A stretch of DNA of 63,850 nt, filler included, from Lenisia limosa (lineage: Eukaryota; Protista; Breviatea), in assembly GCA_001655205.1 (NCBI GenBank). It is 10 parts of 10 records of this genome, joined end to end, with 100 filler letters (N's around TTAATTAATTAA, not from the genome) between each part and the next. Parts side by side here need not be neighbours in the genome. Positions count along the whole stretch, not along the records: positions 8,380 to 18,327 come from LPNZ01011589.1; 9 more parts are not named here. One strand, given 5' to 3'. The notes beneath the pieces are model-generated. The model was not told the DNA's origin and searched no databases. It saw only the letters and a list, made by a program, of their open reading frames with translations. Positions 15,957 through 17,337 of the stretch are shown here, in pieces; within the stretch, counting starts at the first letter, position 1; every line of letters starts with the position of its first letter. A program made the translations under genes and the position numbers.

Positions 15957-17337
15957 ATGAAAGAGTCTAGTGTTATTAATACTGCTGAGTGGCCTCTATT
16001 GCTGAAAGTGTTTCTCTTATTTTGATTTGAATTATGGAAATCTCAATTCAAGAACTAATCATTTTACTGCTATTCCCTCAGGATGGTCTCCATTAAACAG
16101 GCCCATTTCAGAATACATAAGGTTCCAAAGGTGTTGTTCTGATCTAGGTATGGTGTCATTAATTTGGATAAGCCGTCTAATCCGTCTTCTCATGAGGTAG
16201 TAGCTTGGGTTAAGCGTATTTTGAAGGTTGAAAAAACTGGTCACTCTGGTACTCTTGATCCGAAAGTGACTGGATCGTTAATTGTTTGCATTGATAGAGC
16301 AACAAGGCTTGTGAAATCACAGCAAGGAGCTGGTCTTTTTCTCTTTTTTATTTAGGAAAAGAATATGTTTGTGTGCTTCGTTTACATGATTCAATTGAGA
16401 AAAAGCTTCTAGAAAATGCAGTAATGACCCTTCAAGGAGCACTTTTTCAAAGGCCTCCTTTGATTTCCGCTGTAAAAAGGCAGCTTAGAGTGAGAACAAT
16501 CTATGACACAAAGCTGTTTGAAGTATTTTTTCTTTTTATAATGAGGTTGATATTTCTAGACACCTTTCATGCTTTTGGATAAAGTGTGAAGCAGGAACCT
16601 ATATTAGAACCCTTTGTGTTCACCTAGGTTTATTAGTGGGAGTTGGTGGACATATGCAAGAGCTAAGGAGAGTTCGATCTGGGATTCTTGGAGAAACAGT
16701 ATATTTTTCTTCTAACTGGGACAATTTGGTAACCATGCATGATGTAATGGATGCACAATGGGAATATGAGACAATCAAGGATGAGTCTTACCTTAGAAGG
16801 AGTATCATGCCCCTTGAGGTTTTATTAACAAATTTCAAGCGAATTGTGGTCAAAGATAGTTGTATCAATGCCTTATGCTATGGAGCAAAACTGATGGTAC
16901 CAGGTTTACTGAAATTTGAAGGTGGAATTGAGGTGAATGATGAGGTTGTGCTCATGTCCACTAAAGGAGAAGTTGTTGATTATTATTTTATTTTGGCTGT
17001 AGCTATTGGATTGGCACAAATGACAACAAATGTAATGGCTCAGTGTGATCATGGTTTGTTTTTCATGTTGGGTAACATATAGGAATTATTGCCAAAATTA
17101 AAAGAGTTATCATGGAAAGAGACACTTATCCAAAAAGATGGGGACTTGGTCCAAAAGCTTCAGAAAAGAAAGTTTTTAAATATGTTATTATTCTTTTGAA
17201 ATTAATTGAAGAAGGAAAACTTGATAAGTATGGTAGGAAAAATGACGAAACACCTGAGTCGTGGTTTACAAACTATGTTGATTTTTGGTAAGTTGTTTGT
17301 GTATTAATCAATTAGTGAACAGCCTGAATTAAAGTAA
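15957..17337 (+). CDS. DKC1: H/ACA snoRNP pseudouridine synthase Cbf5/dyskerin, 10 exons seen (5' end may lie in the gap)
   Basis: [102 protein letters not shown] and GKLDKYG are all present, with nine 21-29 nt introns. Confidence 0.97.

What the first reader, a model, noticed from the sequence alone, without database searches (positions are those of the whole stretch)
16008..17198. Ultra-short introns with non-AG acceptors (GT-TG, GT-GG) in an intact essential gene, CBF5
Seen: restoring the conserved Cbf5 sequence requires removing nine 21-29 nt AT-rich inserts that all start with GT. Five end in AG (16122-16147, 16333-16355, 16523-16545, 17054-17082, 17288-17315). Four do not: 16008-16029 (22 nt, ..TTG), 16699-16719 (21 nt, ..TGG), 16972-16995 (24 nt, ..TTG) and 17172-17198 (27 nt, ..TTG). 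The -1 G is always kept and only the -2 A varies. The exons have no stops or frameshifts, and the 22-nt insert must be removed to keep the frame. Known: the acceptor AG is near-invariant in spliceosomal introns and is read by U2AF35. Inference: this lineage has relaxed 3' splice-site recognition, possibly defined by intron length.
Basis: partly seen in the sequence, partly recalled or inferred. Interest (0 to 1): 0.88.

Follow-up and report, generated by a model that had tools for sequence, protein, structure and literature searches.

The report
Tiny non-AG introns in CBF5
An intact, expressed gene for the essential enzyme Cbf5/dyskerin is split by nine introns of 21-29 bases, and four of them end in TG or GG instead of the near-universal AG; if read-level RNA data confirm this, the organism's splicing machinery can do without the AG signal.

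Summary
Window 15957-17337 (+) encodes a 385-aa Cbf5/dyskerin once nine GT-starting inserts are removed. It is about 75% identical to algal and fungal Cbf5. Five inserts end in AG. Four end in TTG, TGG, TTG and TTG.

The 22-nt insert must be removed: solved Cbf5 chains place the flanking residues next to each other. Its site and phase match an intron in a chytrid CBF5, so it is an old spliceosomal intron.

No canonical GT-AG, GC-AG or AT-AC alternative keeps the homology. Two assemblies and a 36x DNA contig agree on every base.

RNA evidence is indirect. A polyA RNA run holds 9 of 25 sampled 31-mers across 16942-17228. That fits exon-only words (0.34) and not retention of the 24- and 27-nt inserts (0.77; P = 4e-6).

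New point: the four non-AG introns are all phase 0. Three are multiples of three without stops, against none of nine AG introns here. This suggests weak acceptors persist where retention is harmless.

No read-level junction was seen. The neighbouring RPL23A gene has only AG introns. Real non-AG acceptors are my best reading at about 0.6, and a lineage-wide rule is unproven.

The parts
15957..17337 (+). CBF5/dyskerin coding region: 10 exons, 9 introns, 385 aa plus TAA
   Evidence: Spliced translation. Pfam DKCLD, TruB_N, TruB_C_2 and PUA on the exon pieces. PDB Cbf5/DKC1 matches. 73-76% identity to full-length Cbf5 proteins. The ATG and 5' flank were read from an independent assembly that fills the N gap.
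16008..16029 (+). Intron 1: 22 nt, GT..TTG, phase 0. Removal is obligatory.
   Evidence: Read-through stops after 5 codons. The flanking residues are adjacent in 3zv0_C. A Spizellomyces CBF5 intron has the same position and phase. The only in-frame GT-AG alternative, 16010-16052, deletes the conserved NYGNLNSR.
16122..16147 (+). Intron 2: 26 nt, GT..TAG, phase 2
16333..16355 (+). Intron 3: 23 nt, GT..TAG, phase 1. Position shared with Spizellomyces.
16523..16545 (+). Intron 4: 23 nt, GT..GAG, phase 0
16699..16719 (+). Intron 5: 21 nt, GT..TGG, phase 0, 3n, stop-free (would read VYFSSNW). Contains CTAAC 4 nt from its end.
   Evidence: It is a gap in all homologues. The TruB_C_2 profile is continuous across it. 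No canonical alternative exists, and the next AG is 51 nt downstream and would delete 17 conserved residues. Not tested by RNA.
16972..16995 (+). Intron 6: 24 nt, GT..TTG, phase 0, 3n, stop-free (would read VVDYYFIL)
   Evidence: It is a gap in all homologues. 31-mers overlapping it appear absent from the RNA run. The next AG, 7 nt downstream, would shift the frame.
17054..17082 (+). Intron 7: 29 nt, GT..TAG, phase 1
17172..17198 (+). Intron 8: 27 nt, GT..TTG, phase 0, 3n, stop-free (would read VFKYVIILL)
   Evidence: Homology requires exact removal. 31-mers overlapping it appear absent from the RNA run. The next AG, 13 nt downstream, would shift the frame.
17288..17315 (+). Intron 9: 28 nt, GT..TAG, phase 2
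14304..14865 (+). Neighbouring RPL23A gene, used as a same-genome control. Four GT-AG introns: 14313-14345 (33 nt), 14505-14527 (23), 14713-14746 (34), 14821-14854 (34).
   Evidence: Spliced translation. Pfam Ribosomal_L23eN and Ribosomal_L23. High RNA word depth.

Best explanation
The four inserts are ordinary ultra-short spliceosomal (U2-type) introns whose acceptor A at -2 has mutated: TAG to TTG three times and TAG to TGG once. They are still excised at the original junction. In this genome introns carry almost no signal. They have a 5' GT, a T-rich body of 21-34 nt, an A about 3-8 nt before the end, and a terminal G followed by a purine. I infer that the 3' junction is set mainly by geometry, meaning its distance from the branch site or 5' end inside the catalytic centre. 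The terminal G is kept because it pairs with the first G of the intron at exon ligation. The -2 A helps but can be lost. Shown here: the gene is intact and expressed; exact removal is needed for homology; the 22-nt intron cannot be read through; and RNA words spanning the 24- and 27-nt inserts appear to be missing. Inferred: the exact cut sites, the efficiency of removal and the mechanism. All four are phase 0, and three are stop-free multiples of three. This suggests such weakened acceptors splice less reliably and persist mainly where an unspliced copy would not destroy the frame.
For: Spliced ORF of 385 aa, 73-76% identical to Cbf5 over its full length. Exon pieces hit consecutive Pfam profile positions. 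The inserts fall on gaps in all homologues. K33|N34 adjacency holds for the 22-nt insert. No in-frame GT-AG, GC-AG or AT-AC alternative keeps the homology. Intron 1 shares site and phase with a chytrid CBF5 intron. An independent ENA assembly and a 1678-nt DNA contig at word depth 36 show the same bases with no differences. RNA run X2 holds 0.54 of the words over the gene, where exon-only words give at most 0.65 and retention of inserts 5, 6 and 8 would give 0.77. It holds 0.36 over 16942-17228, where exon-only words give 0.34 and both inserts retained would give 0.77 (P = 4e-6); one retained gives 0.55 (P about 0.03). The Y-N-G|R context is kept at all four sites. TG is the one non-AG acceptor with experimental support in U2 introns (PMC2374985).
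Against: No read or contig shows any of the four junctions. Read laying placed no RNA contig on the gene, probably because of a filter. The RNA argument rests on 25 sampled words and cannot tell TG use from use of a nearby AG. Introns 1 and 5 have no RNA test. Protein homology leaves the register open by one base. Only one gene shows the feature, and RPL23A next door is 4 of 4 AG. In humans TG never works as a sole acceptor, and AG>TG mutations abolish use of the site (PMC2374985). The excess of stop-free 3n lengths (3 of 4 against 0 of 9, Fisher P = 0.014) is what one would expect if some inserts are simply not spliced. Both assemblies probably derive from the same reads.
Confidence: 0.6

Rival explanations
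1. Mixed state. Only the 22-nt intron is spliced, at TG. Some or all of the three stop-free 3n inserts are dead introns that stay in the mRNA and are translated as 7-9 residue hydrophobic insertions.
For: All three are phase 0, multiples of three and stop-free, against 0 of 9 AG introns. The 21-nt insert has no RNA test. A prokaryote-style gene call reads straight through two of them (P0001).
Against: The RNA word share over 16942-17228 fits removal of the 24- and 27-nt inserts and rejects retention of both (P = 4e-6) and of either one (P about 0.03). The inserts start with GT, are T-rich like the other introns, and interrupt contiguous Pfam profile positions. They would place VVDYYFIL and similar strings into conserved TruB_C_2 and PUA segments.
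Confidence: 0.15
2. The locus is a decaying or non-functional copy. Transcripts use the nearest AGs or retain the inserts and are degraded, and a separate all-AG CBF5 supplies the protein.
For: Four hits to the acceptor dinucleotide in one gene is what decay could look like. Use of the next AG truncates or shortens the ORF.
Against: There are no stops or frameshifts in 1158 coding bases. Identity to distant Cbf5 is 73-76% in every exon, including those downstream of each non-AG intron. DNA depth is single-copy-like, at 36 against 44 for the neighbour. The RNA run holds essentially all exon-only words of this very sequence in the probed stretch. No second copy appeared in the protein search.
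Confidence: 0.08
3. Sequence or assembly error at the -2 base of the four acceptors.
For: Both assemblies and the Logan contigs probably come from the same read set. The scaffold has gaps and a poly-G artefact nearby.
Against: Four independent errors at the same functional position are very unlikely. The DNA contig is clean at word depth 36, with no alternative letters across 15955-17493. SPAdes and the window assembly agree on the sequence.
Confidence: 0.04
4. The inserts are removed by something other than the major spliceosome, such as U12-type splicing, programmed DNA elimination or another RNA-processing route.
For: Non-AG termini are commoner among U12-type introns (own knowledge). Dicyemids, one candidate source lineage, are reported to rearrange DNA in somatic cells (PMC6543705).
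Against: No U12 5' motif or branch motif is present, and 21-27 nt is far too short for that class (sequence). The DNA run holds only the insert-containing form at full depth. The boundaries are GT..G and not TA-bounded. The inserts look just like the AG introns beside them.
Confidence: 0.04

Closest known systems
TG 3' splice sites of human U2-dependent introns (Szafranski et al. 2007, PMC2374985)
   Same: GT donor and TG acceptor, a pyrimidine at -3 and a purine at +1. An AG lies within 28 nt downstream for three of the four sites here (23, 7 and 13 nt).
   Different: In humans TG is only ever an alternative to a nearby in-frame AG, and never the sole acceptor. Here the nearby AGs are out of frame or delete conserved residues, so the TG or GG site must be the productive one. 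One site is GG, with no AG within 50 nt. The introns are 21-27 nt, not hundreds.
Ultra-short introns of dicyemids and myxobolid myxozoans (PMC13644364, PMC6543705, PMC6736024)
   Same: Median intron length of 22-27 bp. The 5' signal is reduced to GT(a). There is no polypyrimidine tract to speak of, and weakly conserved A residues sit a few bases before the 3' end. GC (about 36%) and repeat richness resemble Dicyema japonicum.
   Different: Those surveys report AG at the 3' end, but they are based on annotations that allow only canonical sites. Non-AG acceptors are not described there. The source organism of this window is not established.
U12-type (minor) introns with non-canonical termini
   Same: They tolerate 3' ends other than AG (own knowledge).
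   Different: They need the long conserved 5' motif and a branch motif 10-15 nt from the 3' end. Neither is present, and the introns here are far too short.
Selection on 3n introns in Paramecium (Jaillon et al. 2008; own knowledge, not read here)
   Same: In a genome of tiny introns, stop-free introns of length 3n are special because their retention escapes nonsense-mediated decay. Here 0 of 9 AG introns are stop-free 3n.
   Different: In Paramecium such introns are depleted. Here the non-AG class is enriched for them (3 of 4), which is the opposite sign for a sub-class with a damaged acceptor.
Lineages rich in non-canonical introns (Oikopleura, Fritillaria, euglenids, diplonemids; PMC12501133, PMC12621601, and own knowledge for the tunicates)
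   Same: Constitutive departure from GT-AG in many genes.
   Different: Those cases mostly alter the donor or both ends, or use structure-based nonconventional introns. Here the donor GT and the terminal G are kept and only -2 varies.

Membership tests
Cbf5/dyskerin (H/ACA pseudouridine synthase) | DKCLD, TruB_N, TruB_C_2 and PUA domains in order | tested here: met
   Exon pieces hit all four Pfam families at consecutive profile positions. PDB Cbf5/DKC1 chains match.
Cbf5/dyskerin (H/ACA pseudouridine synthase) | Catalytic Asp in the GTLDP motif and full-length conservation | tested here: met
   [11 protein letters not shown] is present in exon 3. Identity is 73-76% over 348-378 aligned residues.
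U2-type spliceosomal intron | GT (or GC) at the 5' end | tested here: met
   All nine start with GT, and the four non-AG ones do so in the register fixed by homology.
U2-type spliceosomal intron | AG at the 3' end | tested here: not met
   TTG, TGG, TTG and TTG at 16029, 16719, 16995 and 17198. The same bases appear in two assemblies and the DNA contig.
U2-type spliceosomal intron | Absent from mature mRNA, with exons joined exactly | tested here: inconclusive
   The 31-mer shares of RNA run X2 fit removal of the 24- and 27-nt inserts. No junction-spanning read or contig was obtained. The 22- and 21-nt inserts are untested.
U2-type spliceosomal intron | Position shared with introns of orthologues | tested here: met
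   Intron 1 (non-AG) and intron 3 coincide in site and phase with Spizellomyces CBF5 introns. The other three non-AG sites are not shared with the two genomes compared.
Human-type TG-AG tandem acceptor | TG used only as an alternative to an AG within 28 nt that is itself a productive acceptor | tested here: not met
   AGs lie 23, 7 and 13 nt downstream, but using them gives ORFs of 18, 306 and 379 aa in place of 385. The GG site has its next AG at 51 nt.
U12-type intron | Conserved RTATCCTT 5' motif and TCCTTRAY branch motif 10-15 nt from the 3' end | tested here: not met
   The 5' ends are GTGTTT, GTATAT, GTTGTT and GTTTTT. The only branch-like CTAAC sits 4 nt from the end.
Ultra-short animal introns (dicyemid / myxobolid type) | Most introns 20-30 bp, with a minimal GT(a) donor | tested here: met
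   The 13 introns are 21-34 nt with a median of 26, and the donors share only GT. Compared with PMC13644364.
Ultra-short animal introns (dicyemid / myxobolid type) | Source organism is a dicyemid or myxobolid | not testable with these tools
   Run and organism names are coded. The contig comes from an ENA metagenome assembly. No taxonomic marker is in the window.
Ciliate-type internal eliminated sequence | TA-bounded and missing from somatic DNA | tested here: not met
   The boundaries are GT..G. The DNA run shows only the insert-containing form at full depth.

The most novel reading that the evidence does not exclude
This lineage, probably a parasitic animal with about 25-nt introns, has a spliceosome that no longer requires the acceptor AG. 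The 3' junction would be measured from the branch site or 5' end, with only the terminal G needed. A sizeable share of its introns (here 4 of 13) would then be GT..TG or GT..GG. Published annotations that allow only canonical sites would have missed or mis-modelled them.
Probability: 0.35. Interest if true: 0.85.

Novelty: new variant of a known kind. Interest (0 to 1): 0.68.

Why it matters
The acceptor AG is among the most invariant signals in eukaryotic gene expression. In humans TG acceptors work only beside a real AG. Constitutive TG or GG acceptors in an essential, expressed gene would show that exon ligation can proceed with only the terminal G when introns are near the physical minimum length. 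That would offer a natural system for asking how the 3' splice site is chosen. There is also a practical side. Gene finders restricted to GT-AG would mis-annotate such genes, either by leaving 3n introns in as coding sequence or by breaking the gene at the 22-nt intron. This would distort the protein sets and splice-site logos published for these genomes.

Tried and rejected
1. Read laying on 11600-17595 with the DNA and RNA runs. The DNA contig matched perfectly. No RNA contig was laid on CBF5 although the run holds over half its words, probably because conserved, human-like contigs are filtered.
2. Searches for a transcript-derived protein of this organism. A 169-aa ORF query found only the genomic read-through ORF P0001. 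A profile of exon pieces on two scaffolds was swamped by algal and fungal Cbf5. By local hmmsearch, our spliced protein would have scored 660 bits and been listed, so it is not in the database.
3. Canonical alternatives. I enumerated every in-frame start/end pair around each non-AG junction and use of the next AG. None keeps the homology.
4. My hand-read 30-nt GT-AG alternative for intron 6 was a miscount. It is 31 nt and out of frame.
5. AlphaFold2 on the ORF with two inserts retained gave pLDDT 50 and was unusable for judging whether the inserts sit in loops.
6. Widening the intron sample. Pfam on 20 further ORFs of the window and of the whole 16-kb contig found no other conserved gene.
7. 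A search of JGI metagenome contigs for the spliced or unspliced junction found no match. A search for relatives of exon 6 gave at best 80% identity, so no close relative.
8. Rfam found nothing in the piece.
9. A +1 frameshift at TTT-TGA inside the 22-nt insert would also restore the frame. I rejected it as far less economical than an intron at a conserved intron site.

Full report
WHAT IS THERE. The piece 8380-18327 is AT-rich (GC about 0.36) and holds two recognisable genes. RPL23A lies at 14304-14865 and CBF5/dyskerin at 15957-17337, both on the + strand. An independent ENA metagenome assembly of the same locus (L001/L002, a 16,078-nt SPAdes contig) is identical through CBF5. It also fills the N gap at 15883-15954 with 41 bases of 5' flank, which places the start codon at 15957.

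THE OBSERVATION. The product is 73-76% identical to full-length Cbf5 of green algae and chytrids over 348-378 residues. The exon pieces hit DKCLD, TruB_N, TruB_C_2 and PUA at consecutive profile positions. For example, TruB_C_2 positions 1-28 end exon 5 and positions 32-65 open exon 6, so the profile has no room for the seven codons of the 21-nt insert. In an alignment with eight homologues, the 21- and 24-nt inserts fall exactly on gaps. For the 22-nt insert, exon 1 aligns to residues 23-33 of yeast Cbf5 chain 3zv0_C, ending at K33, and exon 2 starts at N34. So exactly 22 nt must go. Five inserts end in AG. Four end in TTG, TGG, TTG and TTG.

IS IT MORE THAN CHANCE OR ERROR? Protein homology alone leaves two to four equivalent registers at each non-AG junction. 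In each case one register starts with GT, and fixing that register makes all four inserts end in G, with T at -3 and a purine at +1. I enumerated every in-frame pair of ends within about 45-70 nt of each junction. No GT-AG, GC-AG or AT-AC pair comes close to the homology score of exact removal. The only canonical option for intron 1 (16010-16052) deletes NYGNLNSR, which matches NFDRLNVR / NFDKLLVR in solved Cbf5 chains. Using the next downstream AG gives ORFs of 18, 368 (17 conserved residues lost), 306 and 379 aa in place of 385. A 1678-nt DNA contig of run X1 covers 15955-17493 at word depth 36 with no differing letter. The depth is like that of the neighbouring gene (44), so the locus looks single-copy. 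These DNA sources probably share one read set, so they exclude assembly artefacts better than they exclude sequencing artefacts. Even so, four independent errors at the same functional base are not credible.

ARE THEY INTRONS BY DESCENT? I recovered the exact exon-intron structures of CBF5 in Chlorella variabilis (13 introns) and Spizellomyces (4 introns) from their genomic loci and mapped them on a three-way alignment. Intron 1 here, the 22-nt GT..TTG one, lies after the K of WPLLLK in phase 0. That is the same site and phase as the first Spizellomyces intron. AG intron 3 is shared with Spizellomyces too. So the one non-AG insert that cannot be read through sits at an old spliceosomal intron position. 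The other three non-AG sites are not shared with these two genomes.

RNA EVIDENCE. It is indirect. The tool warns that conserved, human-like contigs are dropped, which probably explains the gap. I therefore used word shares. Over the whole gene, words lying wholly in exons make up 0.65 of all words. With the three in-frame inserts retained, the ceiling would be 0.77. I spent the second search on 16942-17228, chosen so that the hypotheses differ most: exon-only words are 87 of 257 (0.34), both inserts retained gives 0.77, and one retained gives 0.55. X2 held 9 of 25 sampled words, a share of 0.36, while the DNA run held 1.00. By hypergeometric sampling this fits the exon-only model (mean 8.5). 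It rejects retention of both inserts (P = 4e-6) and disfavours retention of either one (P about 0.03). Three things follow. The locus is transcribed. The mRNA carries these very exon sequences, which argues against a different expressed paralogue. And the 24- and 27-nt TG inserts are missing from the assembled RNA, just like the AG intron between them. What this cannot show is the exact junction, or anything about introns 1 and 5.

All four non-AG introns are phase 0 and follow an exon ending in A. Three are multiples of three with no in-frame stop. None of the nine AG introns in the two genes is a stop-free 3n intron. Their lengths are 26, 23, 23, 29 and 28 in CBF5 and 33, 23, 34 and 34 in RPL23A, and the 33-nt one ends on an in-frame TAG (Fisher P = 0.014). 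In genomes of tiny introns, retention of a stop-free 3n intron escapes nonsense-mediated decay (Paramecium work; own knowledge). My reading is that a damaged acceptor lowers splicing fidelity, and that such introns survive mainly where an occasional unspliced mRNA still encodes a full-length protein. The same pattern feeds the main rival, that some of them are never spliced. The RNA shares argue against that rival for two of the three.

MECHANISM. This is inference. The introns here have almost no signal: GT, a T-rich body, an A 3-8 nt from the end, and a terminal G. That matches what is reported for dicyemids and myxobolid myxozoans, where the donor is reduced to GTa and weak A residues precede the 3' end (PMC13644364; also PMC6543705 and PMC6736024). 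In so short an intron the branch point and 3' end are only a few bases apart. The 3' junction may then be fixed largely by reach within the catalytic centre. The terminal G would still pair with the intron's first G, while the -2 contact would be dispensable. TG is the only non-AG acceptor with solid experimental support in U2 introns. In humans, however, it works only next to a real AG within 28 nt, and AG>TG mutations kill the site (PMC2374985). Three sites here do have an AG within 7-23 nt, so an early AG-dependent recognition step followed by choice of TG is conceivable. But those AGs are non-productive, and the GG site has none within 50 nt. U12-type splicing and DNA elimination do not fit the sequences or the DNA data.

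WHAT REMAINS OPEN. The source organism is unknown. GC, repeat load, intron sizes and use of TAA and TAG as stops fit a dicyemid best and a myxobolid less well, and they do not fit a ciliate or a nucleomorph (PMC6736024). The sample is 13 introns in two genes, and the neighbouring RPL23A is fully canonical. No transcript-derived protein of this organism is in the protein database, and no close relative is in the JGI metagenomes. A lineage-wide rule is therefore unproven.

VERDICT. Real, productive non-AG (TG/GG) acceptors in an intact, expressed CBF5 are the best explanation, at about 0.6. Partial or full retention of the in-frame ones is the main rival. Read-level RNA mapping would settle it quickly.

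Noticed in passing
window 14304-14865 (+): RPL23A gene with four GT-AG introns of 33, 23, 34 and 34 nt. Parts of it reach very high word depth in the RNA run (up to about 7700).
   Followed up: yes
window 15883-15954; L001 9261-9301: The 72-N scaffold gap is only 41 nt in an independent assembly and holds the 5' flank. CBF5 then starts at ATG 15957, so the 385-aa protein lacks the usual 20-40 residue N-terminal extension and the Lys-rich C-terminal tail seen in the 444-514 aa homologues.
   Followed up: partly
window 12000-13200 and 15400-15880: Repeated DNA. The DNA-run word depth is 100-450, against 36-44 over the genes, and many contigs are 90-95% alike. A poly-G run at about 15866-15879 borders the gap. 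One RNA contig matches 15550-15690 with a 72-nt stretch replaced by 32 other bases, so a diverged repeat copy is transcribed.
   Followed up: no
window 11326-13430 (+): Long Lys/Glu-rich open frames with no Pfam match. This may be a lineage-specific or repeat-borne gene.
   Followed up: partly
L002 9200-16078 (rest of the 16-kb contig): No recognisable conserved gene in about 7 kb. The locus is gene-poor and repeat-rich, unlike a ciliate macronucleus or a nucleomorph.
   Followed up: partly
window 16007, 16698, 16971, 17171: The exon base before each of the four non-AG introns is A, whereas 6 of the 9 AG introns follow a G. All four non-AG introns are also phase 0. The numbers are small and I have no explanation.
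   Followed up: partly
window 17993-18327: After a 184-N gap the sequence becomes GC-richer and has a long open frame of different character. It may be a scaffold join to unrelated sequence.
   Followed up: no
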